A stretch of 64,000 nt of DNA, taken from Macrostomum lignano (Eukaryota). The first letter of the stretch is position 1. Every line of letters begins with the position of its first letter. Positions 6,776 to 47,122 of the stretch are shown one piece after another. The stretch covers positions 178,127-242,126 of the forward strand of contig NIVC01001751.1 of the NCBI GenBank assembly GCA_002269645.1, in the 5' to 3' direction. The translations under genes were made by a program, and so were the position numbers. The notes under the pieces were generated by a model. The model saw nothing but the letters and a program-made list of their open reading frames with translations. It was not told the origin of the DNA and did not search any database.

Positions 6776-7275
6776 AGAATCTTGCCTACCAAAGTCTCGT
6801 CTGGAACTACAAAATATGGATTTAGTCTTGAGCCCTATAAAATTGAGTGCTATTTTGTAATAAAAGGTGAACTATTAATTTATCTAGGCACCGGACTCCC
6901 GTGACGGATTTTAACATCGGCAGTGAGGCTGCAGTCCTGTCAGCAGGCTTGACTTCAGTTGACAGCAATTACTCAAAATTATGGCCCATAATAAATATTT
7001 ACGAGCAGAATTAAAGTCGGCAGTTTGGTTAATACACCACAGCTCATGGTATCCGAGGCAATTCATATTTCTACTATCACTATATGCAAGCCTCCTGAGA
7101 ATTAGAAATTTCAGCGGCTCGGTGTGGATCTTGGGAAAAACTTTTGACGTAGGTCTGACCCGAAACTTCTCTGGATTAGAAATTTTATAATCCTGGAATG
7201 GGCTGCCAATTGAAATTCTATTTATACTTTATAGTTGTTGCAATAAACTTGATTTAAACACCTTGACTTGACTTG

Positions 7276-7563
7276 AACACCCACAAGTACCCCGCTTCCC
7301 ATTGTTGCAGGGTATCTAACACCCACAAGCACCCCAATTCGCATTGTTGCAGGGTATCTAACACCCACAAGCACCCCAATTCCCATTGTTGCAGGGTATC
7401 TAACACCCACAAGCACCCCAATTCGCATTGTTGCAGGGTATCTAACACCCACAAGCACCCCGCTTCCCACTGTTGCAGGGTATCCAACAACCACAAGCAC
7501 CCCACTTCCCACTGTTGCAGGGTATCCAACAACCACAAGCACCCCGCTTCCCATTGTTGCAGA
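7276..7563. repeat. 39-bp minisatellite (~7 copies) immediately upstream of the GPCR start codon
   Basis: Unit contains CCCATTGTTGCAGGGTATCTAACACCCACAAGCACCCC; the last copy ends 12 nt before ATG 7576. Confidence 0.9.
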
Positions 7564-7575
7564 AAATCCTCAACC

Positions 7576-9716
7576 ATGGGATCAGCGCTGAGCGGGCCCC
7601 TGGCCAACCGCACCCAGCTGATAGCCTGCAGCAACATATCCGGATTGCGAGCCTCAGAGCACCAGGCGCTGGCCAGGTTCCAGGAATTCTACCGGCCTGT
7701 CCATGGCTACGTGTGCGTGCTGCTGTGCGTCTTCGGCGTGGTGGCCAACGTGGCTAACATTGCCGTGCTCACTCGCAAGGTGATGCTGGCCTCCTCCATC
7801 AATGTCATCCTGCTGGCTGTGGCGGCCGCCGATCTGCTCACAATGCTGCTGTACTTTTTTCAGGTGCTTTTTTGACTAAATAATTCATTTTTTATAACTA
7901 TGGTACTTTTTAAGCATGCTGTGCTCTGAGGGTTAGGGCCGGCTAACATTTAAATCCGTTTGATGGATTCGTACATAGCTCGTGTACCCTATGTACAGAC
8001 TTCATCACGTGACTGCTTTACCGCATTTATTATCTCGTCACGTGATGAAGCTTGTGCGTGGGGGGCAAATGTACATTGGGGGAGCAGCTGTGGAATAATG
8101 ACCGGATAACTAACGCGCCACCATTGCTTAGTCTGTTGCATCTTAGTCTGCTTTATCAGTGGCAGGAGGCTGTGTGCACCCTGGCGCACTTTAAGCGACA
8201 TTGCCACACAACCGGCGAGAGGCATTGCTGCCCATTCCGCCGACTCCCCTGAGCAGCACACAAGCGCGCGGATACGTACGCAGTCACACGCGCAGGCACA
8301 CACTCACACAGGAGTGTACAGCGGCCCTAACTTTATTTATCGTTAGGCATGTACACTTCACTGTGCCTTGGGGGTTGGCCATCAATGCCGCTAACTGCAC
8401 GAGCAGAGCCAAGCCGGGATTCCAATTCAGCCCCAAATTCATGTGACTGCACTTGGAATCGAGCCTGGGCCGCTGGCATATCGGAGCGCCACCTCAGACC
8501 ACACATGTGTATCATTGCAGTGTGCTTTTTCTAAATTTAGCAGAATTAAGCTACTGCAAGTAGAAGCATTAGAAATATCCATGGTACCCATTAGTTAGTT
8601 AAGTTAGATTGCAGTGGGTGAGTCGCACGAGCGTACGGCAACTCCTGGGACCAGTTTTTGGCCTGGAGCCAAAAAAGCACTTTAGCATTTTTGAAGTACC
8701 ACGGAGCCACTCTGCCCCGCAACAATGCCCCGTAGATTCTGCACTTCACCCTGCTATCGCCGGGCGAGGGCCTGAGCATGCCGCACACCCTATCGTACCC
8801 GTGGATCGTGTACTCGCTGTTCGCCATCAGCCTGGTGCTGGTGCTGCACACCGTGGCCTGCTGGCTGACGGTGGCGCTGGCCGTGTTCCGCTTCCTCTAC
8901 ATCGCCCTACCGACCCGCGGTGTCCAGCTGGCCAGCTTCCGCAACGCCTACATCAGCATAGCCGCCATCTGCCTGGTGTTCGCGCTGACCACCACGCCCA
9001 ACTACCTGGTGAACGTGGCCAAAGCCTGCCGCTCCAGCCGGGACCAGGTGGTGTACTTCATCGGCCTGCCGGACGTGATGACAGCAAGCCTGGTGGAGTC
9101 GAACTACTGGACCATCGCCGTGCTGTACAAGATCGTGCCCTGCCTGCTGCTCTCGTTGATGACCGTCCTGCTGATTGTCCAGCTGTCCAACGCGGCCCGC
9201 AGGCGCCGAAAGCTGCTCAGCAGTGGCAAGAGTTCCCAGCGGGAGCAGCGGAAGGATAGGCGGGAGCAGCGGACCACCATCATGCTGCTGGCCATTGTGA
9301 TCATCTTCATCATCACCGAGCTGCCGCAGGGCATCATGTCCCTTCTCTGTTTCGTAGTTAAAAATTTCGACACCAACGTCTACAGTCCTCTCGGCGACGT
9401 CCTCGACCTGCTGTCCCTGATCAACAACAGCGTCAACTTCGTGCTGTACACCACCATGTCCAAGCAGTTTCGCGACACCTTCGCTGACGTGTTTCTCACC
9501 TGGTGCCGCCGGCCGGGACCGCCAGCCGCTGCAAAAGGCGGCGAAGCGAAAGACGCAGCCGCTGTGGAGATTGAGGATGACGATGGGGCCCAGCCGCCGG
9601 CGCCGAACGGCCAAGAGGCCGGCAGAGCGAAGCCGGCCGCCGCCTGCTCGACAGGGGAAATCGCCTGCGAGGAGGCGATGCCGCTGCAGTCTCAGAGACG
9701 GAGCCACCTGGTCTGA
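7576..9716 (+). CDS. Class A peptide GPCR, myosuppressin/sex-peptide/FMRFamide-receptor-like (7TM Srw/DmsR type), ~422 aa, 2 exons
   Basis: Exon 1 7576-7863 (MGSALSGPLANRT...GVVANVANIAVLTRK...LAVAAADLLTMLLYFFQ, CAG|GT, phase 0). Exon 2 8736-9716 (TAG|ATT; ILHF...HTVACWLTVALAVFRFLYI...TELPQG...NNSVNFVLYTTMSKQFRDTF). Seven hydrophobic segments, N-terminal NRT/NIS sequons and family-typical TM3, TM6 and TM7 motifs. Confidence 0.92.
7910..8502 (-). mobile_element. tRNA-derived SINE copy in GPCR intron 1
   Basis: 8157-8502 is the reverse complement of 22035-22380 at high similarity; the lower boundary is approximate. Confidence 0.7.
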
Positions 9717-15370: not shown

Positions 15371-15609
15371 CAGGTCAAGTCCGTGTTTCGAGACGTTTAA
15401 TTGGTAGAAAACACTCTAAAATTCTCGTAGAATCAAGTCCGGTACCTCTGGGACAAGCGATAGATGCGATATTCTTCACCGAGTCCTTTCTCTGCCTCTC
15501 CCATCTGCATATCACAGTCCTTAGGACAGACTGGGGCAGGCGGACTCTGCTTACTCAGCAACCCAAGCAACTAAAGCTGCCACACATGGAGAGCCTACAG
15601 ATTATCAGG

Positions 15610-15623
15610 GTCGCTATGGCAAC
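15610..15623. promoter_or_regulatory. RFX X-box upstream of CUB-TM gene 1
   Basis: GTCGCTATGGCAAC fits the X-box consensus GTYNCY-AT-RGNAAC; about 310 bp upstream of ATG 15934. Confidence 0.7.
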
Positions 15624-15933
15624 AGAGAGACTCTTGCAGTCTAGGAAAGGGAGAGAGATGGAAAAAGTAAGGGAAGTGCGGGGTTGGGACTAAAAGCCCA
15701 ATATTCATGCGGTGCATTGGGCCATTGATTTTTTACCTTAGTAAAAAAAGCTGCTTTCATCGACTTTCGAGGCTGCTCTATTGGAGCAGCTGGCGCTAGA
15801 TGGGGCCACCAGAGGCAAATAAAAAGCACGAGGAAGAAACAGAATCACATGGAGGCTGGAGCTGGGATAGGCGGGAGAAACTTATGCAATAAATGCATTG
15901 TCTCAGCCTGCGCGAGCCTGACGGTGCGGAGCG

Positions 15934-18900
15934 ATGGCCTGTGCCAGCAGGATCCTGCGGGCGGCAGTCGCCATCTGCTGCGGTCTTCTGCTCCTGCCTG
16001 GACCAGCGCAAGCGGAATCCTGTGAGTAGCCGCGGCCCTGCACTTTTACACCTGTCCACCTGACTGTCCATATACTAAAAATGGTCTGTCGGTATGTGTG
16101 TGATCGATTTTAGCAAAAACGGCTCAACCGATTTTCTTCGAACTTGCACTGTTCGATCAGAAATTTTCCCGTGACGGTACATGCATCGTGGCTAAGAAAT
16201 TGCTCGATGCTAAAGGCATTAAATATTCGAAAAACATGCTTTTTTGCAAAGGTCAAGCAAACTTTTCGACTTGAAATGCATTGTAAGAATGCTAGAGAAA
16301 AAACTGACTGGTTGAATTCTGATTCTGAAATAGATTGCATCATAACTGAATTGTAACTCCGACTTGAATTGAAATGCAGTGTGGAAGCGTAGCACCAGAC
16401 TTGATTTAAATTGCGTAACCATATTGTTAACTGATACTGACTGACTGAGAAACTGATTATGTCATAACTGCTTCGTGTGATTTACTCTATGCTTGGATTT
16501 AAAAGTGTTGAGTTATATAAGTGCAAAAGTTGATGTTATCAAAACGATGAGAGCTAGCCTAAAGGTGAACAAACTAAACTGCTAAATGCAGCGACGATGG
16601 TTCGAATTTTCATAGAGTATAATTTTTTTAATTAAAGCTTTTCAACGTCAGGAAAACTAAAAGACTTTTTAAAAAGAAGCGTCATGTAAAAATCATAGAA
16701 GCGTCATATAAAAAATCATAGTAGCGTCATATAAAAATCATAGATGCGTCATTTAAAAAATCATAGAAGCGTCATAAAAAAATCATAGATGCGTCATTTA
16801 AAAAATCATAGAAGCGTCATGTAAACAATCATAGAAGCGTCATGTAAACAATCATAGAAGCGTCATGTAAACAATCATAGAAGCGTCATGAAAACAATCA
16901 TAGAAGCGTCATGTAAACAATCATAGAAGCGTCATGTAAACAATCATAGAAGCGTCATGTAAACAATCATAGAAGCGTCATGTAAACAATCATAGAAGCG
17001 TCATGTAAACAATCATAGAAGCGTCATGTAAAATATCATAGAAGCGTCATGTAAACAATCATAGAAGCGTCATGTAAACAATCATAGAAGCGTCATGTAA
17101 ACAATCATAGAAGCGTCATGTAAAAAATCATAGAAATGCCATGTAAAAAATCATAGAAGCGTCATGTAAAAAATCATAGAAGCGTCATGTAAACAATCAT
17201 AGAAGCGTCATGTAAACAATCATAGAAGCGTCATATAAACAATCATAGAAGCGTCATGAAAACAATCATAGAAGCGTCATATAAAAATCATAGAAGCGTC
17301 ATGTAAAAAATCATTGAAGCGTCATGTAAACAATCATAAAGCGTCATGTAAAAAATCATGGAAGCGTCATGTAAAAATCATAGAAGCGTCATGTAAACAA
17401 TCATAGAAGCGTCATGTAAACAATCATAGAAGCGTCATGTAAAAAATCGTAGAAGCGTCATATAAAAATCATAGAAGCGTCATGTAAAAAATCATAGAAG
17501 CGTCATGTAAAAATCATAAAGGCGTCATGTAAAAATCATAGAAGCGTCATATAAAAATCATAGAAGCGTCATATAAAAATCAAAAAACGCCATTTAAAAA
17601 ATCATAGAAGCGTCATTTAAAAACTAATGAAAGTGTCATTTAAAAAAAATAAGAAGCATCATGGTAGAATAAAAGAAGCGTCATGTCAGACATGAAGGGT
17701 GTCATGGAAAAATTAAATGCAGCTATAATGCTGTGCTGGGGAGAAAAACTGAGACGTCAAGGCTCTCAGAAAATAACTGAGATTACGGGGGGGGTTTCTA
17801 AGATGTCAAAGCAAAAGCCAGAAGCTAATTCAAAGTTCATGTACTTTACTCAATTTTTTTATTGCATTCTTTGTTGGCTCGCCACGGGGGGGGGCGCTGA
17901 TAGAAGAAGAGTCATGTAAAAAATAAAAGTAGCACTATGTATACATAAAAGAAGAGTCATGTCGAAGTTAAAAGATTCATTTGGGAATTGCTACGATGTC
18001 AAAGCTTGGTGGAAATCGTTATAGTGCTGTGATTCTTAAAGAAGGAATCACTAAAATGTCAAGGCTTAGGGGAGAAGAATTGCTGAGATTTCAAGGCTTT
18101 AGGTTGGGTTAAAGTTAGGTTTAGGTCAGGTGTGGGTTGAGGGTTATATTTTATCGGGTTTCAAGGTTAGCAGGGGATTTTTCAGATTTCAAGGTTTATG
18201 GGCGCCATCGCTGACATGTTAAGGCTTACGGGGGGAGTAGCTGAGATGTCAAGGCTCACGGGGGTATAAATGAGATTTCAAGGCTAAAGTCAGAAGCTAC
18301 ATGTAGTTTATTTAAAACTTTTTATTACATTATTTGATGCCTCCTCAGGGGAGGGATCGCTGATAAAAAAAGTGTAATGTAAAAAATAAAAGAAGCTTCA
18401 TGTCGAAGTTAAGAGATTCATTTGGGAATCCCTACGATGTCGAGGCTTGCAGGGAATCGCTATAATGCTGTAGTAGTGCTATAATGACTCTTAGAGAGAA
18501 TTATTACTGAAATTTCAATGCTTTAGGGTTAGGTTAGGGTTAGGGTTAGGGTTAGGGTTAGGGTTAGGGTTAGGGTTAGGGTTAGGGTTAGGCTAGGGTT
18601 AGGGTTAGAAGGTTGACAGATATTTTTAGATTTCCAAGGCTTATTGGGGGCATTGCTGAGATGTCAAGGGGGGAGTTGATATGTTAAAGCTTGTGGGGGG
18701 GGGAATTACTGACATGTCAAGGCTTACAAGGTTTGACAGGAGATTTTTTAAGATTTCAAGGATACATGTAGCTTATTAAAAAAACGTGTATTGCATTTCT
18801 TTGGCTCCCCAACGGGAGGCGTAGATTGCTAGTCTTGGAACTACTTTCGTCTGTGCCCTATCCGCAGGCGACTACGTCTCCACTGCAGCTGGACCCTGCG

Positions 18901-21900
18901 ATGCCACTGCCACTCAAGGCAGCTGCGCCGACTACTATCAAGCGTTCGCTGACACGTCCTACCAGTACATCCGGAGCCCTAACTATCCCGGCCCCTATGC
19001 TGAGTGAGTCGGCCTCCCACCTGTGATCTTGCACGGCTTCTCTTCTTCACTTTCTCCTTTCTTTCCTTCCCACCCGTCTCCAATCCTCTTCCCACCCGTA
19101 TCCAATCCTCTTCCCACCCGTATCCAATCCTCTTCCCACCCGTCTCCAATCCTCTTCCCACCCGTCTCCAATCCTCTTCCCACCGCCAATCCTCTTCTCC
19201 TCACCGAATCTCTTTTCCCAGCCGTCACCGAATCTCTTTTTCCAGCCGTCACCAAATCTCTTTCCCAGCCGTCACCAAATCTCTTTTCCCTGCCGTCACC
19301 GAATCTCTTTCCCAGCCGTCACCAAATCTCTTTCCCAGCCGTCACCAAATCTCTTTTCCCTGCCGTCACCGAATCTCTTTCCCAGCCGTCACCAAATCTC
19401 TTTCCCAGCCGTCACCAAATCTCTTTCCCAGCCGTCACCAAATCTCTTTTCCCAGCCGTCACCGAATCTCTTTTTCCCAGCCGTCACCGAATCTCTTTTC
19501 CCAGCCGTCACCGAATCTCTTTTCCCAGCCGTCACCGAATCTCTTTTCCCAGCCGTCACCGAATCTCTTTTTCCTAGCCGTCACCGACCTTCTTCCCATT
19601 CGCCTCCTGCACTCTTTTCACCTGTCTTTAACTCTCTGATTACTCTTAATCTCTTTAATTAGCAAAGCATCCCCCGCGCGACGCCCGCAGCAACCAGGTG
19701 TGCCGCTGGGTCCTGTCCGCCTGCCGCTGCTCCAATCCTCTCCGGCCGGAGGCAAAATTTCGCGTTGAATTCGAAGTGCTTGACTTTGAAATTCAGGACA
19801 GCCCATCCTGCACCCAGGACTTCGTAGAGGTTAAGGACGGTGAGCAATTAAATTGAAACAATTCATAGGCAGCTCTCAATTTGAATAATTAGCTATTCAA
19901 GTGCCCGTCATGAGCATCAAAGCTAATTTAATTGCGCAGGTTTATCTTATTTGTTGGTACTATAATTTAGCTATTAGGTCAATTAGTTTAATTGAAGTGA
20001 GAGCCGGCAACCCAGAATGCAGGCAGTCACAGCTCTATTCAAGGAGCTTCAGTTTAACAGAGGAATCCCCCCTCACAATGTTTTTTTACTGCGCCGGAAA
20101 TAAAGTTGCCAGCCCTTCGGACCGTCCAGATATTCAATGATTCTGCCAGAAAGTCGGATTTTCCCATAAGCGCCAGTGTACGCCAGTGTACGCCAGTGTA
20201 CGCCAGTGTACGCCAGTGTACGCCAGTGTACGCCAGTGTACGCCAGTGTACGCCAGTGTACGCCAGTGTACGCCAGTGTACGCCAGTGTACGCCAGTGTA
20301 CGCCAGTGTACGCCAGTGTACGCCAGTGTACGCCAGTGTACGCCAGTGTACGCCAGTGTACGCCAGTGTACGCCAGTGTACGCCAGTGTACGCCAGTGTA
20401 CGCCAGTGTACGCCAGTGTACGCCAGTGTACGCCAGTGTACGCCAGTGTACGCCAGTGTACGCCAGTGTACGCCAGTGTACGCCAGTGTACGCCAGTGTA
20501 CGCCAGTGTACGCCAGTGTACGCCAGTGTACGCCAGTGTACGCCAGTGTACGCCAGTGTACGCCAGTGTACGCCAGTGTACGCCAGTGTACGCCAGTGTA
20601 CGCCAGTGTACGCCAGTGTACGCCAGTGTACGCCAGTGTACGCCAGTGTACGCCAGTGTACGCCAGTGTACGCCAGTGTACGCCAGTGTACGCCAGTGTA
20701 CGCCAGTGTACGCCAGTGTACGCCAGTGTACGCCAGTGTACGCCAGTGTACGCCAGTGTACGCCAGTGTACGCCAGTGTACGCCAGTGTACGCCAGTGTA
20801 CGCCAGTGTACGCCAGTGTACGCCAGTGTACGCCAGTGTACGCCAGTGTACGCCAGTGTACGCCAGTGTACGCCAGTGTACGCCAGTGTACGCCAGTGTA
20901 CGCCAGTGTACGCCAGTGTACGCCAGTGTACGCCAGTGTACGCCAGTGTACGCCAGTGTACGCCAGTGACCAACGAAGTCAGAGCTGATGCAGACACATG
21001 CGGTCCACGTGCTGATGAAATTTGGGGGCTTTGCAAGGCCGCACCGAGGCGCAGTGCTGATTGGCGCACAGGGGTGTACTGAATACACTAGCGCTTATGG
21101 GAAAAATTCGACTATTTGACAGAATTGTTGAATATCTTGACGGTCCGGAGGGTTGGCGACTTGATTATTGTTTCAGAAGGTGCGCAGCAAAAAGTCAGCC
21201 CGTGGTCTGGAATTTCTTGTGCCTGCGTTGCTCCGTTCCGGTGAAGCAAAAAATTGTGAAGAGAGGGATTCCCCCTTTTGGTAGTTCTACTGCTAATGAC
21301 GTCATTTGATGCACTTATTGCCCTCACAGGAAAGCGCCTATGGGCCCACTCGTTTGGGCAATACTGCGGCAACAGCTGCGTCAAAGGCAACAGCAACAAC
21401 CTCACGCAGAGCACCGGTTTGCACCTGCTGGTCACTTTCCAGACCGATGTGTTCAACGCGAGACAGCCGCAGAAATATCGGGGCTTTCAGGCGCGCTATC
21501 GTTGTGTTGAGCTCGGTAAGCTGCTGCGAAGTCCCGTTTTAGAATTGGTTTGAGCAATCTGTAATCTGCGGAGCTGCTGTGGGTAATATAAACCAGTCTT
21601 TTAGAGCCAAGCCCCAAGGCAGTGGTCAGTGGAATGGGCATGGTGGCTGGCTGCAAACAAATCTGAGCAGTCATGCTTGATTTTCCGTAGTCGGTTTCGA
21701 ACGAATTTGAATAATTTCTGACATTTGTCTTTCTTTTTTGTTGTCCTGTTCGGTTTTTATTACTCTAGCATCGATGTGCAAGTAGTATAAGCAGAAAATG
21801 AACATTCAATTTTCTGACTTTTTGTTTAATTGACAGCAGAATATGATAGCCCTGTTTTGAGTCTCTTTTCTCAAAGGAGAGATCGATCCAGATTCTATTA

Positions 21901-22706
21901 CTGAAAGTTTGGTACCTCTGAAGAATTTGAATTCAGGGCTGAAAACTAAGAAATTTGAGTAATTAATTTGAATCTATCGATGCTCTGGCAACTTGCTGCA
22001 AATGTTTAGCTACAGGGAATAAGGGGTCGTGACTCAGTGGTCTGGCGCGGTGCTCTGATGTGCCAGCGGCCCAGGCTCGATTTCAAGTGCAGTCACATGA
22101 ATTTGGGGCTGAATTGGAATCCCGGCTTGGCTCTGCTCGTGCAATTAACGGTCTTTAGGGCCAAACCCCAAGGCACAGTGAAGTGTACATGCCTAACGAT
22201 AAATAAAGTTAGGGCCGCTGTACACTCCTGTGTGAGTGTGTGCCTGTGCGTATGACTGCGTACGTATCCGCGCGCTTGTGTGCCTGCCCAGGGGAGTCGG
22301 CGGAATGGGCAGCAATGCCTCTCGCCGGTTGTGTGACAATGTCGTCTGAAGTGCGCCAGAGCGCACAGCCCCTGCCTCTGTTTGTATATAGATACAGGGA
22401 ACAGTTTATATCGGCTACTATGGCATCGCAGTGAGCGCGAGCCCCTGTCAGCGGAATCAGAGTGGGAATGTGCTTCCTTGTTGTTGTTGTTGCTGCTGTT
22501 GCTTCTGTTGTTGTTGTTGTTCAGCAAAAACAGCCGATCATGCCGCAATGAATTCCGCAGAGACAACCGTGACGGACGCGCTGGTGCTGGGCCTGGCCAA
22601 CTACCTGCTGATTGCGGCCAGCTGCTGCCTGCTCGCCATCTTCACCGCTGCGGCCTCCGTGCTGGCGGTCCGAGAGCACAACAGAAACCACAGGCTGCTC
22701 AAATAA
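15934..22706 (+). CDS. Single-CUB-domain type I membrane protein, paralog 1 (~234 aa, 5 exons)
   Basis: Exons 15934-16021 (signal MACASRILRAAVAICCGLLLLPGPAQAES), 18868-19003 (CDY...YIRSPNYPGPYAD), 19691-19839 (NQVCRWVL...FEVLDFEIQDSPSCTQDFVEVKDG), 21330-21515 (KRLW...YCGN...LLVTFQTDV...YRGFQARYRC), 22561-22706 (TM LVLGLANYLLIAASCCLLAIFTAAASVLAV, short basic tail). All GT-AG, phases 1/2/1/1, total 705 nt. Confidence 0.9.
16675..17620. repeat. 23-bp minisatellite (~40 copies) inside the Helitron-like element
   Basis: Unit ATCATAGAAGCGTCATGTAAACA and A-tract variants. Confidence 0.95.
18523..18608 (+). repeat. Interstitial telomeric repeat (TTAGGG)n, ~14 units
   Basis: Near-perfect TTAGGG array seen directly. 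Confidence 0.95.
19050..19590. repeat. Two adjacent 22-24 bp pyrimidine-rich minisatellites in CUB1 intron 2
   Basis: CCCACCCGTCTCCAATCCTCTT units, then TTCCCAGCCGTCACCGAATCTCTT units. Confidence 0.9.
20062..21272. mobile_element. Foldback/MITE-like element with long inverted arms in CUB1 intron 3
   Basis: Left arm 20062-20180 is the reverse complement of right arm 21084-21272 (inner ~80 bp roughly 85% identical by eye; the right arm carries an insertion). Confidence 0.65.
20171..20968. repeat. Perfect 10-bp array (CGCCAGTGTA)n, ~80 copies
   Basis: No variant units seen. Confidence 0.98.
22026..22380 (+). mobile_element. tRNA-derived SINE copy in CUB1 intron 4
   Basis: Head GTCGTGACTCAGTGG (A-box-like) ... 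GGCTCGATTTC (B-box-like) with GTGACT/AGTCAC pairing; body shared with the copy in GPCR intron 1. Confidence 0.7.
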
Positions 22707-22911
22707 CCAGCCTAGTAGTTCGAAACTGATGCATACTAATGTTTTTCAATAGCTAAAAAAGAAACATCGTCTGAGAGATATAACAAATAAATTTTTTACA
22801 AATAAATTTCTAAACAGCAATTACAATTAAAGTGCTTAAGAACTGCCTAACATTGAAAAAGTTGACAGTTTTCTATAGTAGCTAGCTCAGTTTCAGTAAC
22901 AGTCAAAGTAG

Positions 22912-23232
22912 GCAGATGGGTAGATAGATATACAGGTAGGTAGATAGATGGATAGGTGGGTAGATAGATATACAGGTAGGTAGATAGATGGATAGGTGGG
23001 TAGATAGATATACAGGTAGGTAGATAGGTGAATAGGAGGGTAGATAGATATACAGGTAGGTAGATAGGTGGATAGGAGGGTAGATAGATATACAGGTAGG
23101 TAGATAGATGGATAGTTGGGTAGATAGATATACAGGTAGGTAGATAGATGGATAGTTGGGTAGATAGATATACAGGTAGGTAGATAGGTGGATAGTTGGG
23201 TAGATAGATATACAGGTAGGTAGATAGGTGGT
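22912..23232. repeat. ~40-bp GATA/GGTA-based minisatellite between the CUB paralogs
   Basis: GGTAGATAGATATACAGGTAGGTAGATAGATGGATAG units. Confidence 0.9.
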
Positions 23233-24688
23233 TAAGTAGTTAGGCAGGCTGGTGGGGAGTAGATCTCTCCGATACGCAGAAGTGTACAGGCGCGAACAAT
23301 TCTGCCTACAAGTGCACAAAAAAAGCACAGTTATTGTCAGTTTCAAAAACTCGAGAATCATTTTAAAAGACTAAGGAGACAAGCTGCATCAGATGCGGTG
23401 CACTATCAGCAGCTGGATCATGAAGGCGGCTTTTTCTGTACTGCCCCCCTTGTCCGCCCATAAATCCCCGGCCAGGCCCCGGCCACCCAGGCCCAGGGGC
23501 AGTGATGCCTTAACAATGCCCCTAACGCCTCGGGGGGAAACCCAATACGCAATCATCGTGTCAAACATCAACAGCTGTCTCTATCAATCTTTCTCTCGCT
23601 TCTGGTGTCCCTAATTCTTGAAAGCCGGGCAGATGTGCGGCCTCGGCCCCCCCTCAGGCAGCTGCCAGACTGCCCGATCCCGCTGCAAGGCTGGATGTAC
23701 TTGCCAAGCCTGCGCACTCAATTAGGGATACCAACTGGCATGACGAGTGCACTTTGGCAAGCGGGAAAAGCATTGAGTTGGCAATTGAAGCACTGATCAC
23801 GTTTAAAATCAATTATTATAATTGCTTCATTTGGGTGGCTCAAAATATATCTGTTGTCCCACTAATTCCTAATCTCATCCTCGCTCTCACACTTAATCTC
23901 ACCCTAATCGCATCCTTTCTCTCGTCTTCACTGTCACTTTAATCTTAAGCGCCCTCTCGTACTGAATCTCACTTGTGATCTCACCTTCTCTCTCACACTC
24001 AATCTCACCCTAATCTCTCTCTCCCTCCCTTTCATACTCAATTTCACTTCTAATCTCACTTTCTCCCACTCTATTTCACCCTAATCTCTTCCTGTTACAC
24101 TTAACCTCACCTCTAATCTCACCTTCCCTCTCACACTCAATCTCACCCCTAATCTCTCCCTCTTATTCTCAAAATCTCACTCGTCAACAGCAGCATCAAA
24201 CTTCAATTTTAGGCATGCCGCTTGAGTCCAACTTTTTGGCAGTATAATTTTAACCTTTACTATCTTGGTGACTCTGTGCAGTTTGCTGTACAGCTAGAGA
24301 CAATCTTCTTCTTTTGAAAGCTTCACATTTAACAACGTACTACTGAGGCTGCTCTAACTGAAGTGTGACATCTAGGAACTACTATGAATCCTTGATGAAG
24401 CATCTTGCGTCTGAAATTGAGTCTACCAGTCAAAATCCCAATGCAACGCAAAGTTTCTTCCCAACTCAATCCCAACTAAATGTCTTCCCAGTGTGTTTTT
24501 TCCCGTCTCTTCTACCCGGAGTGCAGCTGGGCGCTCCATCAAACTATTTCTCTCCTTCAATGAGTGTCCTGAGTTCACTGCCTCCCAGCCCGTCCCCTGC
24601 CTGCGTGGCTGGGAGCAGAGAAAAGAAAAGTGAAAGAGTGGGGGGAGGGGGAGAAGGACATTGCGCATGGGGAAGACAAAGGGGGCTT

Positions 24689-24702
24689 GTTGCCATGGTA
24701 AC
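24689..24702. promoter_or_regulatory. RFX X-box upstream of CUB-TM gene 2
   Basis: GTTGCCATGGTAAC, an essentially perfect X-box, about 180 bp upstream of ATG 24883. Confidence 0.78.
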
Positions 24703-24882
24703 AAAGGGATTTGAGGCTTGCTGAGTTTAGGGGTGGGTCTTTCTGCAAAGCTTAGCTCAACATTTTTGCGAGAGCTAGTTAGATGAAGCAGTTTAACTCA
24801 CGTGAGCAGTTCAGCTTGAGAACCTGACTCTGGAAGCATCAACTCAGAAGGAACCAGGAGCTGCAAACGCCGAAATTTTATC

Positions 24883-26984
24883 ATGAGAATTTGTTGGATT
24901 AATTTCTGCACTTTCTACTGCCTGCTCTGTGTGACCTCCATGACCGAAGCGGAAGAATGTAAGTTCAGCTGTTTTGGGACTTTGCCATTGAACAGAGGCA
25001 TTGTATACTATGAGTAATCAGCACTGACCAGCCCCTGCTCATGTACTCACCTTGCGCCCACAGGTGAATACACCTCTAACGCCAGGGATCCATGCGATGA
25101 AACTGCGAACAGGGGCAGCTGCGCGGACTACTTCCAGTTGTATGCGACCGCGGCTGATCAGATCATTTCCAGCCCCAAATATCCGGGATACTATCCCAAG
25201 TGAGTCTGAGTCTGCATGTACTTTTTGGCGGGGCTACCATGCTATGCAATGCTCTTATTTCTCGAGAAGGCTTAGATAACTTTGTTGCTGCGGTATTCCT
25301 ATTATTAAAATGCTAATATTGATCACTTTAAAACCTCAACCGCTACAGCAACATCGTCTGCCGCTGGGTCCTGTCGGCCTGCAACTGCGGCGACCCTTCC
25401 AATCCGATTCCCAACGTGGACTATCGTGTGGAGTTCGAGGTGCTGGACTATGACTTGCAGGACAGTCCGTCTTGCACCAAGGATTTCTTGGAAATTAAGG
25501 ACGGTGAGCGGTAGAAACACCGGAAGGGTGTGAGAAACCAGGAGTGTGGTTGCCTTGATGCAAGGACAACTGACCTAGGAGTGCTCGCTGAAGGACCAAA
25601 GGAGTGCTTGCTGAAGTACCAAGGAGTGCTTGCTGAAGGACCAAAAGGAGTGCTTGTTGAAGGATCAAGGAGTGCTTGATGAAGGACCAGATGGAGTGCC
25701 TGCTGAAGGACCAGAAGGAGTGCCTGCTGAAGGACCAGAAGGAGTGCTTGTTGAAGGACCAAAAGGAGTGTCCTCTATAGGACCAGAAGGAGGGCCTGCT
25801 GAAGGATCAGAAAAGTGCTTGCCGAAGGACAAAAGGAGTGCTTGTTGAAGGACCAAAAGGAGTGCTTGTTGAAGGACCAAAAGGAGTGTCCTCTATAGGA
25901 CCAGAAGGAGTGCTTGTTGAAGGACCAGAAGGAGTGCCTGCTGAATGACAAAAGGAGTGCTTGTTGGAGGACCAGAAGGAGTGCCTGCTGAAGGACCAGA
26001 AGGAGTGCTTGTTGAAGGACCAGAAGGAGTGCCTGCTGAAGGACCAGAAGGAGTGCTTGTTGAAGGACCAGAAGGAGTTCCCTCCCCTGAAGGACCAAGA
26101 GTGCTCATCGAATGATTATGATAATTATAGGAGCAAAAAATCATTAGTAACATGATAAGTTCAGTATTTTGGGCAGAGGCCTATAAAGCACCGGAATCAG
26201 TAGAAATTTATGTTGTGTTCTTCTCGAGTGCAGTTTCTCGAACCAAATCCGCCCAGGAAAGCGCCTGTGGGACCACCGATATGCTCAGAAGTGCGGCAAT
26301 AAATGCGCTAGCGGAGAAAAGAATAGTACTATCAGCACTAGAAAACACCTGCTAGTCAGCTTCCAGACTGACGTGTTCGACCCTCTGGACCCCACACCGC
26401 ACCGCGGCTTCAGCGCTCGCTTCCGTTGCGTTGCAGTTCGTGAGTTTCTCCCCCTGTGTTTCTCCTCCCATCTGGTCAGGTGTCCTCTCTACAATTCCCT
26501 CCACAACTTCATCAATAACCCTCTTCCACAACCCCCATCCACAACCCCTCAACAAATATCTTCCACAACCCCCATCCACAACCCCCTCAACAAATATCTT
26601 CCACAACCCTCATCCACAACCCTCTCCGCAACCCCTCCGCAACTCCTCCGCAATCCCTTCGCAACCCCTTCGCAACCACTTCGCAACCCCTCCGCAACCC
26701 CTCCGCAACCCCCCTCCACAACCCCCTCAACAACCCCTCCGCAACCCCTCCGCAACCCCCCTCCACAACCCCCTCAACAACCCCCTCCACAACCCCTTCG
26801 CAACCCCTCCGCAACCGCCTCCGACAATGACTCCGCAGCCGTACCGCAGAGCGACAGTCTGGTGCTGGGCCCGGCCAACTACCTACTGATAGCCATCAGC
26901 ATCCTGCTGGCCTTTCTGTTCGGTGGGGCGGCCGTGCTGCTGTTTTTCCGCGAGAAGCGCCGCAATGAGCGGCTTGGCAACTAA
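24883..26984 (+). CDS. Single-CUB-domain type I membrane protein, paralog 2 (~231 aa, 5 exons)
   Basis: Exons 24883-24958 (signal MRICWINFCTFYCLLCVTSMTEAEE), 25064-25199 (IISSPKYPGYYP), 25349-25503 (IVCRWVL...FEVLDYDLQDSPSCTKDFLEIKDG), 26257-26439 (KCGNKC...LLVSFQTDV...HRGFSARFRC), 26839-26984 (TM). Same intron phases as paralog 1; exons 2 and 5 have identical lengths (136, 146 nt); total 696 nt. Confidence 0.9.
25580..26095. repeat. 24-bp minisatellite in CUB2 intron 3
   Basis: Unit GAAGGACCAGAAGGAGTGCCTGCT. Confidence 0.9.
26525..26815. repeat. C-rich ~11-bp degenerate repeat in CUB2 intron 4
   Basis: CAACCCCTCCG/CAACCCCCTCCA units. Confidence 0.85.
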
Positions 26985-28059
26985 CAGCTGTTGTGAGCTT
27001 TGGCAATCAGTAGCGAATCTTGGAAGAGATTGCTGAAAGTGATAATGTCATGTCACTTCACATGTCATGTCACAGGCCATAGTTACAAGATTAATTTCAA
27101 CGTATATGTAGCAAATTGTATGATAACTTTATTATTGTGCTCATTTTCTATTAGTAATTTTTGTTAGCGAATTTCCCTTGAATTTTTTCATTTAAAATTT
27201 CATCACCCTCAATTAGGAGTTTAAAATAGACCTACTGGCCAAGATAAATCGGTCTAAATGATTTATGAGTAGTTAATAGAATCTTTGTCAAGGACATCTG
27301 TTAGTTACTGGACTTGAAAAAGGAAACTAGGGGATAAATTTCTGTTAAGAATGCAAAACCTATCGATTTTAAGAGCTGAAAAATGACAATGTTTCACCTT
27401 CTATTATATATTGAAACAAAGTTTTTTTACGTAATCTACACACCATTTGTTTTGTTAATGAACACTTTAATGTACATAAAATGATGTAATAAATTATTAG
27501 TTTATATCAGGCAGCTTGAATGGATATATTTATTTAGGTCCTAAATTGAAGAAAAAAAAAGCTAATGAATGCCAGAGTACGGGCAGGGCTGTACAGTGGA
27601 ACTCAAGCATGGAATATGGCCGCGACCGCGCGCTCAGCAGCACGGTGTATGAAATGAACTGTAGAGTAGACAGTGGCTGTAACAGTGAAGGCAGTTTTTA
27701 AATAAAATACACAGATAGCCCAATTTTACTATTGAAGTAATAGGGAAAAAAGTGAATTGATCACAAAATAGTATAACAAAACTCAAAGATATAAACGTCA
27801 CGGCATAAAGATAGGAACTGCAAGGCGCTCATTCATAGTGCAATAAATAATACATGTAAATTGTATCGCATTGAAATAGGGTCATTTTTACCTTCACTTT
27901 CTAGCTATGCCAGGCCAAGACCTGCACTGGCCATTTTTATATAATAGTCTTTGTGTTTGATTCAGCAATCGTACTTTTTACTCTTTGTATGAGTATTTCT
28001 ACTCTGTGCAAATCCGTGCTGTAGAAACGGATAAGGGTAAAGAGACCAGCTGAAGAGAG

Positions 28060-30000
28060 TGTAGCCCAAGGAGGGTGTAGACCGAGGAGGGTGTAGACCG
28101 AGGAGGGTGTAGACCGAGGAGGATGTAGACCGAGGAGGGTGTAGACCGAGGAGGATGTAGACCGAGGAGGGTGTAGACTGAGGAGGGTGTAGACCGAGGA
28201 GGGTGTAGTCCAAGAAGGGTGTAGACCAAGAAGGGTGTAGGCCGAGGAGGGTGTAGACCAAGAAGGGTGTAGACCGAGGAGGATGTAGACCGAGGAGGGT
28301 GTAGACCGAGGAGGATGTAGACCGAGGAGGGTGTAGACTGAGGAGGGTGTAGACCGAGGAGGGTGTAGTCCAAGAAGGGTGTAGACCAAGAAGGGTGTAG
28401 CCCAAGGAGGTGTAGACCGAGGAGGGTGTAGACCGAGGAGGATGTAGACCGAGGAGGGTGTAGACTGAGGAGGGTGTAGACCGAGGAGGGTGTAGTCCAA
28501 GAAGGGTGTAGACCAAGAAGGGTGTAGGCCGAGGAGGGTGTAGACCAAGAAGGGTGTAGACCGAGGAGGATGTAGACCGAGGAGGGTGTAGACCGAGGAG
28601 GGTGTAGACCGAGGAGGGTGTAGTCCAAGAAGGGTGTAGACCAAGAAGGGTGTAGGCCGAGGAGGGTGTAGACCAAGAAGGGTGTAGACCGAGGAGGATG
28701 TAGACCGAGGAGGGTGTAGACTGAGGAGGGTGTAGACCGAGGAGAGTGTAGTCCAAGAAGGGTGTAGACCAAGAAGGGTGTAGACCGAGGAGGGTGTAGA
28801 CCGAGGAGGGTGTAGACCGAGGAGGATGTAGACCAAGAAGGGTGTAGGCCGAGGAGGGTGTAGACCAAGAAGGGTGTAGACCGAGGAGGATGTAGACCGA
28901 GGAGGGTGTAGACTGAGGAGGGTGTAGACCGAGGAGAGTGTAGTCCAAGAAGGGTGTAGACCAAGAAGGGTGTAGACCGAGGAGGGTGTAGACCGAGGAG
29001 GGTGTAGACCGAGGAGGATGTAGACCAAGAAGGGTGTAGACCGAGGAGGGTGTAGACCGAGGAGGGTGTAGACCGAGGAGGATGTAGACCAAGAAGGGTG
29101 TAGGCCGAGGAGGGTGTAGACTGAGGAGGGTGTCGACTGAGGAGGGTGTAGACCGAGGAGGGTGTAGTCCAAGAAGGGTGTAGACTAAGAAGGGTGTAGG
29201 CCGAGGAGGGTGTAGACCGAGGAGGTTGAGACCGAGGAGGGTGTAGACCGAGGAGGGTGTAGACTGAGGAGGGTGTAGACCGAGGAGGGTGTAGACCGAG
29301 GAGGGTGTAGACTGAGGAGGGTGTAGACCGAGGAGGGTGTAGTCCAAGAAGGTTGTAGACAAAGAAGGGTGTAGGCCGAGGAGGGTGTAGACCGAGGAGG
29401 GTGTAGACCGAGGAGGGTGTAGACCGAGGAGGGTGTAGTCCAAGAAGGGTGTAGACCAAGAAGGGTGTAGGCCGAGGAGGGTGTAGACCGAGGGGGGTGT
29501 AGACCGAGGAGGGTGTAGACTGAGGAGGGTGTAGACCGAGGAGTTTGTAGTCCAAGAAGGGTGTAGACCAAGAAGGGTGTAGGCCGAGGAGGGTGTAGAC
29601 CGAGGAGGGTGTAGACCGAGGAGGGTGTAGACCGAGGAGGGTGTAGACTGAGGAGAGTGTAGACCGAGGAGGGTGTAGTCCAAGAAGGGTGTAGACCAAG
29701 AAGGGTGTAGGCCGAGGAGGGTGTAGACCGAGGAGGGTGTAGACCGAGGAGGGTGTAGACCGAGGAGGGTGTAGACCGAGGAGGGTGTAGACCGAGGAGG
29801 GTGTAGACCGAGGAGGGTGTAGACTGAGGAGGGTGTAGACTGAGGAGGGTGTAGACCGAGGAGGGTGTAGTCCAAGAAGGGTGTAGACCAAGAATGATGT
29901 AGACCAAGAAGGGTGTAGACCGAGGAGGGTGTAGACCGAAGAGGGTGTAGGCCGAGGAGGGTGTAGGCCGAGGAGGGTGTAGACCGAGGTGGAGGGTATA
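28060..30000. repeat. 16-bp minisatellite (~120 copies) downstream of the tensin stop codon
   Basis: GTAGACCGAGGAGGGT with recurrent GTAGTCCAAGAAGGGT/GTAGACCAAGAAGGGT variants; source of the 400-640 aa minus-strand pseudo-ORFs. Confidence 0.95.
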
Positions 30001-30157: not shown

Positions 30158-33100
30158 CTACCGGCCAATCAGGTACTTGCAGACGAAGCGAACCACGGCC
30201 TCAGCCGGCTGATGCTCTTCGATCTCGCACAGGATGACCGCCGTGTTCTCTTGGCTGTTCGTGTTCTTCCGGGCTACGAAGCCGAACAGCCTGAATAGGA
30301 GGTCGGTGGTTCGATTACTGCTTATTTGTAACCATTCGTGGATCCTTTAAAAATGAAATCCTCTAGAACAGTAATTTAGTATTTTTAACTTACTTTGGAT
30401 GAGCCAGTCCTCTTGCTCTGGACTCTTCGGATTCAAAGCTGAAATGAGCACGCGGTTGCCATGATAGTTAATCATCCCCAGTGAGTAAGTAGGCTTAAAT
30501 CTACCCCGATGCACTGACCTGCAGCCGCCCGGCACCATGCCGCTGTACAGCACGCAGGCAGTCGGGTAGTGCTTCCGGAAGAACTGCCGCCTAGCGTGGT
30601 CGGTCAGACTGATCCCGTCGCGGGCAACCTTTAGCTGGCAGACGCAGGTGCGCAGCCGCTCTCGATGGCGCAGAAGTGCATCCGCGCCGCGGGACAGGCC
30701 GCCGGATCCGGTGAGAGACTCGATGTCAACCGCGCCGATGTACAGCACGCTGCATGCTGGCAGGCGGTTCGGTGGGTTGGGGTGCGAAATGAGTATAGAA
30801 TGTGGAATGAGTCTAGGATGTGGAATGAGTCTAGGATGTGGAATGAGTCTAGGATGTGGAATGAGTCTAGGATGTGGAATGAGTCTAGGATGTGGAATGA
30901 GTCTAGGATGTGGAATGAGTCTAGAATGTGGAATGAGTCTAGGATGCGGAATGAGTCTAGGATGCGGAATGAGTCTAGGATGTGGAATGAGTCTAGAATG
31001 TGGAATGAGTCTAGGATGCGGAATGAGTCTAGGATGTGGAATGAGTCTAGGATGTGGAATGAGTCTAGAATGTGGAATGAGTCTAGAATGTGGAATGAGC
31101 TTAGGATCTGGAATGAGTCCAGGATCTGGAATGAGTCCAGGATCTGGGATGAGTCCAGGATCTGGGATGAGTCCAGGATCTGGATGAGTCCAGGATCTGG
31201 GATGAGTCCAGGATGTGAAATGAGTTTAGGATCTGGAATGAGTCGGAATCTGAATTTCAAGCTGACTGGGGGATTGAGCAGGACTCATAACTGATTGAAC
31301 CAACCTGCTCCGTGCTCTAGGATGACCCGGGGATCCAGGCTAGTATCCGCCGAGTCAAGCGCATCACTCTGGGCGTCTGTCGGCGGCAGTTCCAGGCGAC
31401 AGGGCAGCGCCAGCGGCATCACCGTGTGCTGGTAGATCAGGGCGGCCAGGGAAGCGAACACGGGCTCGTTGGCGCAGCCGCGGATGCGGACGCCTCGACT
31501 GGTCTGTTCGATGAGGAAGTGCCGCACCAGCTCGTCGGCGGCTGAGTTGGCGTCATCGGCCGGTGGGGCTCCCATAGGCACCTCCGCCACTTTGACAGCG
31601 AGGCCGTAGGCGCCGGCGAAGCTGGTGCTGTCGCGGACCACGAAACGACCCGGTGGCAGCGGCCTCAGGATGGCGATGGCTATCGGCAAAGAGTGGAATG
31701 GAGAAGGATTGGAGTGAGGGTCTGAGCTCAATATATTGCCCTGGAAGCTTAATACATCGCGATGGAGCTTAATGCACTGCGTTTGAAGCTTAATAAATCG
31801 CATTGGAGCTTAATGTACTGCGTTTGAAGCTTAATACATCGCATTGGAGCTTAATGTACTGCGTTTGAAGCTTAATACATCGCGATGGAGCCTAGTTTCG
31901 AGGGACACTAGTGGTGAATTCTACTGTTTCTGTATTCAGTGCAGTTTGCCATGCAAATTTTACGCAGTTGCATGAAAATTCAAGCTGAGAAGCCGTACCT
32001 TCTTCTCGGCTTATGTTGGGCAGGTACCAGTACTGAGATGTGTCGTTGACAAACTTCAACATACCGCCAGGCGATGGCGGATCAAATTCGAAATGGCTGC
32101 CGCCACCGGTGCTGTGCCCTGAGTAGCGCTGGCTCGGACTGTTGCTGCCGGGGCTCGCCAACCAGCCTCCGCCATCGCCACCGCCGCTCTGGAACTGCAT
32201 GCGGTGGGACTGGTGACGACTTGACACTGTCTCTGTGTATCCAACAGTCTGCTGGCGATTCTGTGGAAGTTGGAACTGCTGCGGCTGCTGGAACTGCTGC
32301 TGCTGGTGCTGCTGGAACTGCTGCGGCTGCTGGAACTGCTGCTGCTGGTGCTGCTGGAACTGCTGCGGCTGTTGCCTTTGCTGGCTCGAGGATGAGACAC
32401 GAAGAAAGCTGTTTCTCGGTTCAATGCTGGACGCCTGTAGGGTTGCAGCTGAAATGATAGGGAAAAAAGTATTGGCTCTAAATTGCTATCAGCTCATTTT
32501 CATAAGCCAAGCGAAAATTCGGCACAGACCAGCTAGCTGAACACATTAAAATATTTAGATCAGCGACAATAGTTTAAAAGTTAGGTTTTGTCTTTCAAGC
32601 GGCGCATGTGTTATCAAGTGAGTAAATGCAGTTTTATTAACCCCAAAGCAAGTGCTCTCAAAGCTGTAAATTGTAAGCATTAGCTTTAATTCGTTGTTAG
32701 GCCAGCCGGAACTCGTCATGTTATTTTCCCAGGTGCCCAGCCTGAGCAGCCAAGCCGCGTCACCCACTTTTGCCAGCGGTGGCGTAGACAGCGTTGCTAA
32801 ACACAGCGTCGTCCGCCTCGGATGACGACAGGCTGCAGGCGCCTCGGCCGGACGACCTGTCGCAGCTGCTGTTGCCCGCGCCGGTGATGAGAATGGGGCG
32901 CAGTTCGGTCACCTCCATGTAGGTTTTTCCTTCGCCGTCAAAGTCAGCGTGGACTGTCGAGGACGAGGAGGAGGACGCCGTATCGACAACAACCCGAGGT
33001 GGCTGCAGCAAGCTGCACGAGACCCTGGCGTTGGTGGCGGAGGCTGTGGACACGCGGAAACTTCCGCCTCTGCCGCTGCCGGCCTGGCTGGGGGTTCTTT

Positions 33101-47062: not shown

Positions 47063-47122
47063 GCTTCAACAATAAAATCGACAAATCAGTAAAACTGACG
47101 GTCCACAGCAGGCTGCACTCAC

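What the first reader, a model, noticed from the sequence alone, without database searches (positions are those of the whole stretch)
15610..26984. Tandem pair of small CUB-TM genes, each with its own RFX X-box: candidate cilia-associated surface protein family
Seen: two paralogs with identical exon phases (signal peptide, one CUB domain, TM, ~12 aa basic tail), each with a 14-bp X-box 180-310 bp before the ATG (GTCGCTATGGCAAC; GTTGCCATGGTAAC), although the promoters are otherwise dissimilar. Established: RFX/DAF-19 X-boxes at this distance mark ciliary genes. Inference: the motif was kept after duplication because both proteins act in ciliated epidermal or sensory cells, for example as auxiliary subunits or co-receptors (NETO/SOL-1/LEV-10-like roles), or in adhesion or chemosensation. 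I do not recognise this architecture as a named family.
Basis: partly seen in the sequence, partly recalled or inferred. Interest (0 to 1): 0.8.

Follow-up and report, generated by a model that had tools for sequence, protein, structure and literature searches.

The report
Two flatworm CUB membrane genes with RFX sites
Two neighbouring genes of the flatworm Macrostomum lignano encode small surface proteins with one CUB domain. Each has kept a strong binding site for the cilia-linked regulator RFX in an otherwise unrelated promoter, so they are good but untested candidates for proteins of ciliated cells.

Summary
The window is Macrostomum lignano DNA. Two tandem five-exon genes (15934-22706 and 24883-26984, + strand) have GT-AG introns in identical phases. 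They encode 234-aa and 231-aa proteins with a signal-peptide-like N-terminus, one CUB domain (Pfam E 9e-17 and 4e-12), one TM helix and an 11-aa basic tail. They are 53-56% identical, with dN/dS about 0.3 and saturated dS. Only exons still align.

The two 14-bp palindromes are the two best matches in the 64 kb to a matrix built from 29 validated C. elegans X-boxes (22.2 and 18.7 bits). About 0.03 sites that strong are expected per window. The chance of one in each 350-bp upstream stretch is about 3e-8. Functional RFX sites are therefore likely.

Expression in ciliated cells, a ciliary location and an accessory-subunit role remain inference. No expression data, TSS map or orthologous promoter could be reached. 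Published screens show that X-boxes predict RFX control well only when they are conserved.

No ortholog was found outside M. lignano. Gene 1 is already in UniProt as a truncated model without the TM exon. Gene 2 was in none of the protein collections searched.

Verdict: real, ordinary in kind, and a sound testable candidate.

The parts
15557..15571 (+). Two extra RFX-type half-sites (AGCAAC at 15557-15562 and 15566-15571) about 40-50 bp upstream of X-box 1
   Evidence: Half-site scan with GTTRCY. About 1.2 half-sites are expected per 600 bp, so this is suggestive only.
15610..15623 (.). X-box 1, GTCGCTATGGCAAC, ending 311 bp before the gene 1 ATG
   Evidence: Matches GTHNYYATRRNAAC. PWM score 18.7 bits, second best in the window and above the training median of 18.4.
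15934..16021 (+). Gene 1 exon 1: ATG and signal peptide (MACASRILRAAVAICCGLLLLPGPAQA|E), end phase 1
   Evidence: Identical to UniProt A0A1I8IF63. In-frame stop 15 nt upstream.
18868..19003 (+). Gene 1 exon 2: N-terminal Cys loop and start of the CUB domain, end phase 2
19691..19839 (+). Gene 1 exon 3: CUB core, end phase 1
   Evidence: 73% DNA identity to gene 2 exon 3.
21330..21515 (+). Gene 1 exon 4: C-terminal half of CUB with the conserved NLT sequon, end phase 1
22561..22706 (+). Gene 1 exon 5: linker, TM helix, basic tail and stop. This exon is missing from the UniProt model.
   Evidence: Cross-match to gene 2 exon 5 by tblastn at about 2-3e-8. 75% DNA identity over 84 nt. Hydropathy peak. 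P0001 instead reads through the exon 4 donor.
22786..22791 (+). First AATAAA after the gene 1 stop
24689..24702 (.). X-box 2, GTTGCCATGGTAAC, a near-perfect palindrome ending 181 bp before the gene 2 ATG
   Evidence: PWM score 22.2 bits, best in the window and at the top of the training range. One mismatch from the validated bbs-7 and xbx-1 X-boxes.
24883..24958 (+). Gene 2 exon 1: ATG and signal-peptide-like segment (MRICWINFCTFYCLLCVTSMTEA|EE), end phase 1
25064..25199 (+). Gene 2 exon 2, end phase 2
25349..25503 (+). Gene 2 exon 3: CUB core, end phase 1
26257..26439 (+). Gene 2 exon 4: C-terminal half of CUB with the NST sequon, end phase 1
26839..26984 (+). Gene 2 exon 5: linker, TM helix, basic tail and stop

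Best explanation
Two old tandem duplicates in Macrostomum lignano each encode a type I membrane glycoprotein of about 230 aa. The parts are a cleaved signal peptide, a short Cys loop, one CUB domain with three extra predicted disulfides, a short linker, one TM helix with a conserved LVLGxANYLLIA start, and an 11-aa basic tail with no signalling domain.

Each gene is most likely switched on directly by an RFX dimer bound to the palindromic X-box in its own promoter. Both would then be expressed in RFX-positive cells, which in a flatworm are chiefly ciliated cells: multiciliated epidermis, ciliated sensory neurons and protonephridia. At the surface the CUB domain would bind a partner. The tail is minimal and the outer TM segment is conserved, so the partner is more likely a channel or receptor in the same membrane (an accessory-subunit or co-receptor role) than a ligand that signals through this protein alone.

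Shown: gene structures, domain content, purifying selection, and non-random retention of the motif. Inferred: RFX binding, expression in ciliated cells, membrane topology, and the partner.
For: Genes and domains. Purifying selection with saturated synonymous sites: dN/dS 0.28-0.31, dS 1.25-1.4. Promoters and introns do not align.

The two X-boxes are the top two PWM scores in 64 kb. About 0.03 sites at or above 18.7 bits are expected per window, and the joint chance for both 350-bp upstream stretches is about 3e-8. The sequences lie within 1-2 mismatches of validated DAF-19 sites, and the distances from the ATG fall near the validated range of -60 to -285.

The RFX half-site GTTRCY is conserved from fungi to animals, and the motif is enriched in ciliome promoters. 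Conserved X-boxes predict expression in ciliated cells, or RFX dependence, in 64-96% of tested genes.

There is precedent for CUB-domain TM proteins as channel or receptor auxiliary subunits: NETO, SOL-1/2 and LEV-10, and the lineage-restricted CUB-type Nav-beta of pulmonate snails.
Against: No expression, TSS, chromatin or RFX-dependence data for either gene could be reached. No study of X-boxes in flatworms was found.

Gene 1 has six upstream ATGs between the X-box and the start codon. Its TSS or trans-splice site is therefore probably close to the ATG, which puts the X-box roughly 270 bp or more upstream, at the far edge of the typical range.

No forkhead/FoxJ1-type motif accompanies either X-box. 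RFX factors also control non-ciliary programmes. In S. rosetta most promoters that carry the motif are not conserved ciliome genes (44 of 239).

No ortholog was found that would allow a cross-species test. The canonical Ca2+-site Glu of ligand-binding CUB domains aligns with Gln110 in both proteins.
Confidence: 0.45

Rival explanations
1. The X-boxes are genuine RFX sites, but the genes belong to a non-ciliary RFX programme, for example neuronal, secretory or gland, or germline. The proteins are then ordinary lineage-specific surface CUB proteins with roles such as adhesion, matrix binding or ligand capture, unrelated to cilia.
For: The motif statistics are the same as for the best explanation. 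RFX motifs also occur in many non-ciliome promoters. Several conserved-X-box genes are not RFX- or cilia-dependent: 9 of 25 in Drosophila. Neither protein contains any ciliary motif or domain.
Against: In invertebrates studied so far, conserved strong X-boxes near the ATG mostly mark genes of ciliated cells. M. lignano is densely ciliated, so ciliated cells form a large share of likely RFX-positive cells (my inference).
Confidence: 0.27
2. The palindromes are bound by another factor that recognises TGGCA-type or similar half-sites, for example an NFI-like protein, and RFX is not involved.
For: Both sites contain TGGCAAC, which includes the NFI half-site TGGCA (read from the sequence; the NFI consensus is from my own knowledge).
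Against: The whole 14-bp arrangement, two inverted GTTRCY half-sites with an AT spacer, fits the RFX dimer site and scores at or above the median of validated X-boxes. An NFI dimer site needs a 5-bp spacer between TTGGC and GCCAA, which is absent here.
Confidence: 0.1
3. The motifs are chance matches picked out after the fact, and they do not regulate the genes.
For: A third strong match at 33331 lies inside a coding ORF, which shows that non-promoter matches occur.
Against: The joint probability is about 3e-8 for the PWM threshold and about 2-4e-6 for the strict consensus. Even a 1000-fold multiple-testing penalty leaves it under 1e-2. The two sites rank first and second in the whole window.
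Confidence: 0.06

Closest known systems
RFX/DAF-19 direct target genes (X-box genes of C. elegans and Drosophila)
   Same: A 14-bp inverted repeat of GTTRCY half-sites with an AT spacer lies within a few hundred bp upstream of the ATG. The sequences are 1-2 mismatches from validated sites such as bbs-7, xbx-1 and osm-5. The motif is kept while the surrounding promoter diverges, as reported for Drosophila.
   Different: RFX dependence and expression in ciliated cells are not shown. The product is not a conserved ciliome component. Conservation is between paralogs, not orthologs. Site 1 lies further from the ATG (-311) than most validated sites.
NETO1/2, SOL-2, LEV-10, SOL-1 (CUB-domain auxiliary subunits of ionotropic receptors)
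   Same: Type I membrane proteins whose ectodomain is built from CUB domains and which work by binding a channel or receptor in cis.
   Different: Those proteins have 2-5 CUB domains, and mostly an LDLa module, as well as longer cytoplasmic tails. The proteins here have one CUB, no LDLa and an 11-aa tail. In the PDB search NETO2 is only a mid-ranking CUB hit at 8.7e-8. No orthology.
CUB-domain Nav-beta subunits of pulmonate snails (Fux et al., cited in PMC6259924)
   Same: A small, lineage-restricted family of CUB proteins in a lophotrochozoan, with no homologs outside a narrow clade, reported as channel accessory subunits.
   Different: Those proteins are described as Ca2+-binding and neuronal. 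No link to RFX or cilia has been reported.
Neuropilins and cubilin (best solved-structure CUB matches)
   Same: The CUB domain aligns over its full length with cubilin CUB7 and with neuropilin-2 a1/a2 (E 1e-22 and 1e-13).
   Different: Those are multi-domain proteins. The resemblance is at the domain level only. The Glu of the Ca2+ and ligand site aligns with Gln110 here.

Membership tests
CUB domain (Pfam PF00431) | Profile match above the curated gathering score | tested here: met
   61.9 and 46.9 bits against a cut-off of 21.4, covering profile positions 5-110.
CUB domain (Pfam PF00431) | Four canonical cysteines (C1-C2, C3-C4) | tested here: met
   Gene 1 has C49, C79, C115 and C137; gene 2 has C45, C75, C113 and C135. 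They sit at the canonical positions in the alignments to cubilin and neuropilin. The disulfides themselves are not tested. Six further conserved Cys are present.
Ca2+-binding CUB (cbCUB; Tyr-Glu-Asp-Asp signature, Gaboriaud 2011 as cited in PMC6259924) | Conserved Glu and two Asp that coordinate Ca2+ and bind a basic ligand residue | tested here: inconclusive
   D118 and D164 (gene 1 numbering) and Y69 are present. The position that aligns with the Glu is Gln110 in both paralogs, with acidic residues at 108 and 111 nearby. The AlphaFold model was too poor to decide (pLDDT 37). The numbering of the signature residues is from my own knowledge.
NETO / SOL-2 / LEV-10 auxiliary subunits | Two or more CUB domains plus an LDLa module ahead of the TM helix | tested here: not met
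   One CUB domain only and no LDLa hit even at E<=1.
NETO / SOL-2 / LEV-10 auxiliary subunits | Physical and functional association with an ionotropic receptor | not testable with these tools
   Needs co-immunoprecipitation or electrophysiology.
RFX direct targets (X-box genes) | X-box that matches the validated consensus within about 1 kb upstream of the ATG | tested here: met
   18.7 and 22.2 bits, at -311 and -181.
RFX direct targets (X-box genes) | Motif conserved in related promoters while the flanks diverge | tested here: met
   Met for the two paralogs: dS about 1.3 and promoters that do not align. Orthologs in other species could not be reached.
RFX direct targets (X-box genes) | Expression depends on RFX or on the X-box | not testable with these tools
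   Needs RNAi with qPCR, or a mutated reporter.
Ciliome / ciliated-cell genes | Enriched expression in ciliated cells or localisation to cilia | not testable with these tools
   No M. lignano expression data were reachable. The multiome paper PMC11398382 has no mention of RFX or cilia in its text and no held supplements.
Snail CUB-type Nav-beta subunits | Sequence homology to Lymnaea Nav-beta 1-4 | not tested
I know of them only from PMC6259924.

The most novel reading that the evidence does not exclude
These are founding members of a Macrostomum- or flatworm-specific family of RFX-driven ciliary membrane proteins. In this reading a minimal single-CUB, single-TM protein serves as an accessory subunit of a ciliary channel or receptor. 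That would be a ciliary counterpart of NETO/SOL or of the snail CUB Nav-beta, a role not so far described for CUB proteins.
Probability: 0.12. Interest if true: 0.6.

Novelty: new member of a known kind. Interest (0 to 1): 0.35.

Why it matters
If the inference holds, the pair gives M. lignano, a transgenic flatworm model, two compact promoters specific for ciliated cells. Each would have a single identifiable RFX site. It would also add a lineage-specific membrane component of ciliated cells whose partner could be sought.

The pair is also a clean natural case of a transcription-factor site surviving after every other promoter base has been randomised, which is useful for calibrating X-box searches in Spiralia.

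On the practical side, the work corrects one public gene model (A0A1I8IF63 lacks its TM exon) and adds a paralog that was in none of the protein collections searched.

None of this overturns current understanding.

Tried and rejected
1. Ortholog search. The word-indexed searches with gene 1, gene 2 and their profile found only the M. lignano entry plus weak multi-CUB hits. The exhaustive phmmer run was swamped by cubilin-like giants, so single-CUB relatives scoring below 87 bits stayed invisible.

2. Other genomic or transcript copies. P0001 and the ORF at 26373-26984 are not on record. Neither spliced protein is in the collection.

3. Structure. The single-sequence AlphaFold model of P0001 had pLDDT 37 and was unusable. 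I did not run a fold search.

4. Literature. I found nothing on RFX or X-boxes in Macrostomum or flatworms, and nothing on CUB genes in Macrostomum. The M. lignano multiome and toolkit papers mention neither RFX nor these genes.

5. Shared co-motifs. There is no forkhead, TATA or collinear shared block in the two promoters. The shared 12-13-mers are not collinear and are of borderline E-value.

6. Rejected readings. One long multi-CUB gene is ruled out, because gene 1 ends with a TM helix and a stop and gene 2 starts with its own signal peptide. A GPI anchor is unlikely, because a charged 11-aa tail follows the hydrophobic segment. A pseudogene is ruled out, because both ORFs are intact and dN/dS is about 0.3.

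7. Rfam and tRNA scans of the window found nothing.
Full report
**Origin and context**

The gene 1 protein is 100% identical over residues 1-186 to UniProt A0A1I8IF63, a 'CUB domain-containing protein' of the free-living flatworm Macrostomum lignano. The window is rich in minisatellites and carries an interstitial TTAGGG array.

Neighbouring genes were identified by Pfam on their ORFs:
- an Srw-type GPCR upstream (about 7.7-9.7 kb, + strand);
- a tensin-like SH2/PTB gene (about 30.3-36.2 kb, - strand);
- a CDC14-like dual-specificity phosphatase exon (47.1-48.0 kb, - strand).

**Checking the observation**

I rebuilt both genes from the sequence. Each has five exons, consensus GT-AG introns and exon-end phases 1,2,1,1. 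Each ATG is the first in frame after an upstream stop.

The products are 234 and 231 aa, with 126 identical positions in 237 aligned columns. Pfam finds one CUB domain in each (8.8e-17 and 3.8e-12) and nothing else credible at E<=1. PDB sequence searches align the domain over its full length with cubilin, neuropilin, MASP and C1r/C1s CUB domains.

Both proteins have:
- a hydrophobic N-terminus with an AQA|E or TEA|E cleavage-type site;
- ten conserved ectodomain cysteines, four canonical and six extra;
- one conserved N-glycosylation sequon;
- a hydropathy peak at about residues 190-223;
- an 11-aa tail of net charge +3 with the shared pattern RE-x-x-RN-x-RL.

The public model for gene 1 reads through the exon 4 donor and ends in intron 4, so it lacks the TM exon. 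Exon 5 is supported by reciprocal tblastn matches between the paralogs at about 2-3e-8, by 75% DNA identity over the TM-coding segment, and by matching phase. Gene 2 is in none of the protein collections searched.

**Age of the duplication and selection**

Nei-Gojobori estimates give dN about 0.38-0.40 and dS about 1.25-1.4, which is saturated. dN/dS is 0.28-0.31. At the DNA level only parts of exons 3, 4 and 5 align. Introns and upstream regions do not. Both copies are therefore old and intact, and both are under purifying selection.

**The X-boxes**

GTCGCTATGGCAAC (15610-15623) and GTTGCCATGGTAAC (24689-24702) end 311 and 181 bp before the respective ATGs. They are the only matches in 64 kb to the C. 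elegans consensus GTHNYYATRRNAAC, where shuffles give 0.24.

I built a weight matrix from the 29 validated 14-bp X-boxes listed in PMC3245922 and scanned both strands.
- The two sites rank first and second in the window, at 22.2 and 18.7 bits. The training set has median 18.4 and maximum 22.1.
- An exact background calculation gives 0.03 sites of 18.7 bits or more per 64 kb.
- The chance of one such site in each of two 350-bp upstream stretches is about 3e-8.

Neutral sequence around the sites has been randomised since the duplication. Selection, or repeated gain under selection, is the reasonable explanation. I therefore regard functional RFX-type sites as likely.

**What that does and does not imply**

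The RFX half-site GTTRCY is conserved from fungi to animals, and RFX motifs are enriched near the TSS of ciliary genes (10.1101/2022.11.11.515474). Predictive value depends strongly on conservation.
- Single-genome X-box searches have high false-positive rates. [quoted passage not shown]
- X-boxes conserved in three nematodes marked genes of ciliated neurons in 24 of 25 cases.
- In Drosophila, 16 of 25 tested genes with a conserved, restricted-consensus X-box were dRFX targets.

Retention in two diverged paralogous promoters is an analogous filter.

Several points argue for caution:
- RFX proteins also run non-ciliary programmes.
- No forkhead motif accompanies either site.
- Gene 1 has six upstream ATGs between its X-box and the start codon. 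Its TSS or trans-splice acceptor is therefore probably close to the ATG, with the X-box roughly 270 bp or more upstream. About 39% of M. lignano genes are trans-spliced (PMC5730564).
- I found no work on X-boxes or RFX targets in flatworms.
- I found no expression data for these genes.

**Protein function**

The architecture is minimal: one CUB domain on a short stalk, one TM helix, and a tail too short to signal. The most conserved stretch outside the CUB core is the outer end of the TM segment, LVLGxANYLLIA, which contains a polar Asn. From general knowledge, that pattern is typical of helix-helix association.

Known CUB-TM proteins act as auxiliary subunits or co-receptors: NETO, SOL-1/2, LEV-10 and neuropilin. 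Pulmonate snails have a lineage-restricted family of CUB-domain Nav-beta subunits. By analogy, a role as an accessory subunit or co-receptor is the best guess, but it remains a guess.

Membership of the NETO/SOL/LEV-10 family fails on architecture: a single CUB and no LDLa. The Ca2+ and ligand site typical of binding-competent CUB domains is only partly present. D118, D164 and Y69 are there, but Gln110 stands where the Glu is expected. The AlphaFold model was too poor to settle this.

**Distribution**

No ortholog was detected outside M. lignano. The profile search returned only weak multi-CUB hits from a sea anemone, a mussel, a liver fluke and two unnamed assemblies. The exhaustive search lists only the 150 best-scoring proteins, all multi-CUB giants, so single-CUB relatives scoring below about 87 bits would not be seen. 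The family looks lineage-restricted, but the search was not exhaustive for eukaryotes.

**Verdict**

The reading 'RFX-regulated' is likely. I would put it at about 0.8, summing the best explanation, the non-ciliary RFX rival and part of the remainder. The reading 'acts in ciliated cells' is plausible, at about 0.45. The specific molecular role is open.

In kind, this is a new member of known classes: CUB-domain type I membrane proteins and X-box genes. Interest is moderate. It is a well-defined hypothesis in an organism where a reporter with 2 kb or less of promoter can test it directly.

Noticed in passing
window 33331-33344: A third strong X-box-like palindrome, GTTGGCATGGCAAC (16.9 bits; 0.13 such sites expected per 64 kb). 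It lies inside the ORF at 32760-33455 (- strand, reading ...VAMPT...) of the tensin-like gene and not near an obvious gene start. It could be chance, an internal promoter or an enhancer.
   Followed up: partly
window 26440-26838 (gene 2 intron 4): This 399-nt intron is a C-rich 11-bp minisatellite and is open in frame with exons 4 and 5 (ORF 26373-26984). If retained, it would insert a 133-aa Pro/Thr/Ser-rich, mucin-like stalk between the CUB domain and the TM helix. The equivalent gene 1 intron has a stop after 12 codons. A second frame is open too, so this may simply reflect the T-poor repeat.
   Followed up: partly
window 15934-21551 versus UniProt A0A1I8IF63: The public gene 1 model (198 aa) reads through the exon 4 donor and ends ...VELGKLLRSPVLELV, so it misses the TM exon at 22561-22706. 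Gene 2 has no entry in the protein collections searched.
   Followed up: yes
window 20099-21166 (gene 1 intron 3): A foldback or TIR-like element. Its inverted arms lie at 20099-20180 and 21084-21166 (82-95% complementary) and flank a perfect (CGCCAGTGTA)x80 array at 20171-20968.
   Followed up: partly
window 18523-18608 (gene 1 intron 1): An interstitial telomere-type array, (TTAGGG)x14.7, lies within a region of repeated units of about 400-500 bp that contain 'gatgtcaaggctt' motifs (about 17700-18760).
   Followed up: no
window 15557-15571: Two extra RFX-type half-sites (AGCAAC) lie 40-50 bp upstream of X-box 1. About 1.2 half-sites are expected per 600 bp, so this is not significant on its own.
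   Followed up: partly
window ~7700-9716 (+): The upstream neighbour is a rhodopsin-family GPCR of the Srw (peptide or chemoreceptor-like) type (Pfam 3.5e-30). Its first coding part sits in the ORF at 7273-7875, after a His/Cys-rich repeat.
   Followed up: partly
window 30347-36185 (-) and 47119-47985 (-): A tensin-like gene (SH2 at 31285-31803, PTB at 30347-30748) and an exon of a CDC14-like dual-specificity phosphatase. Long minisatellites that are open in several frames lie at 27937-29891 and 48117-50476.
   Followed up: partly
window 24801-24806: A palindromic E-box, CACGTG, lies 84 bp (site start) before the gene 2 ATG. Gene 1 has no counterpart.
   Followed up: no
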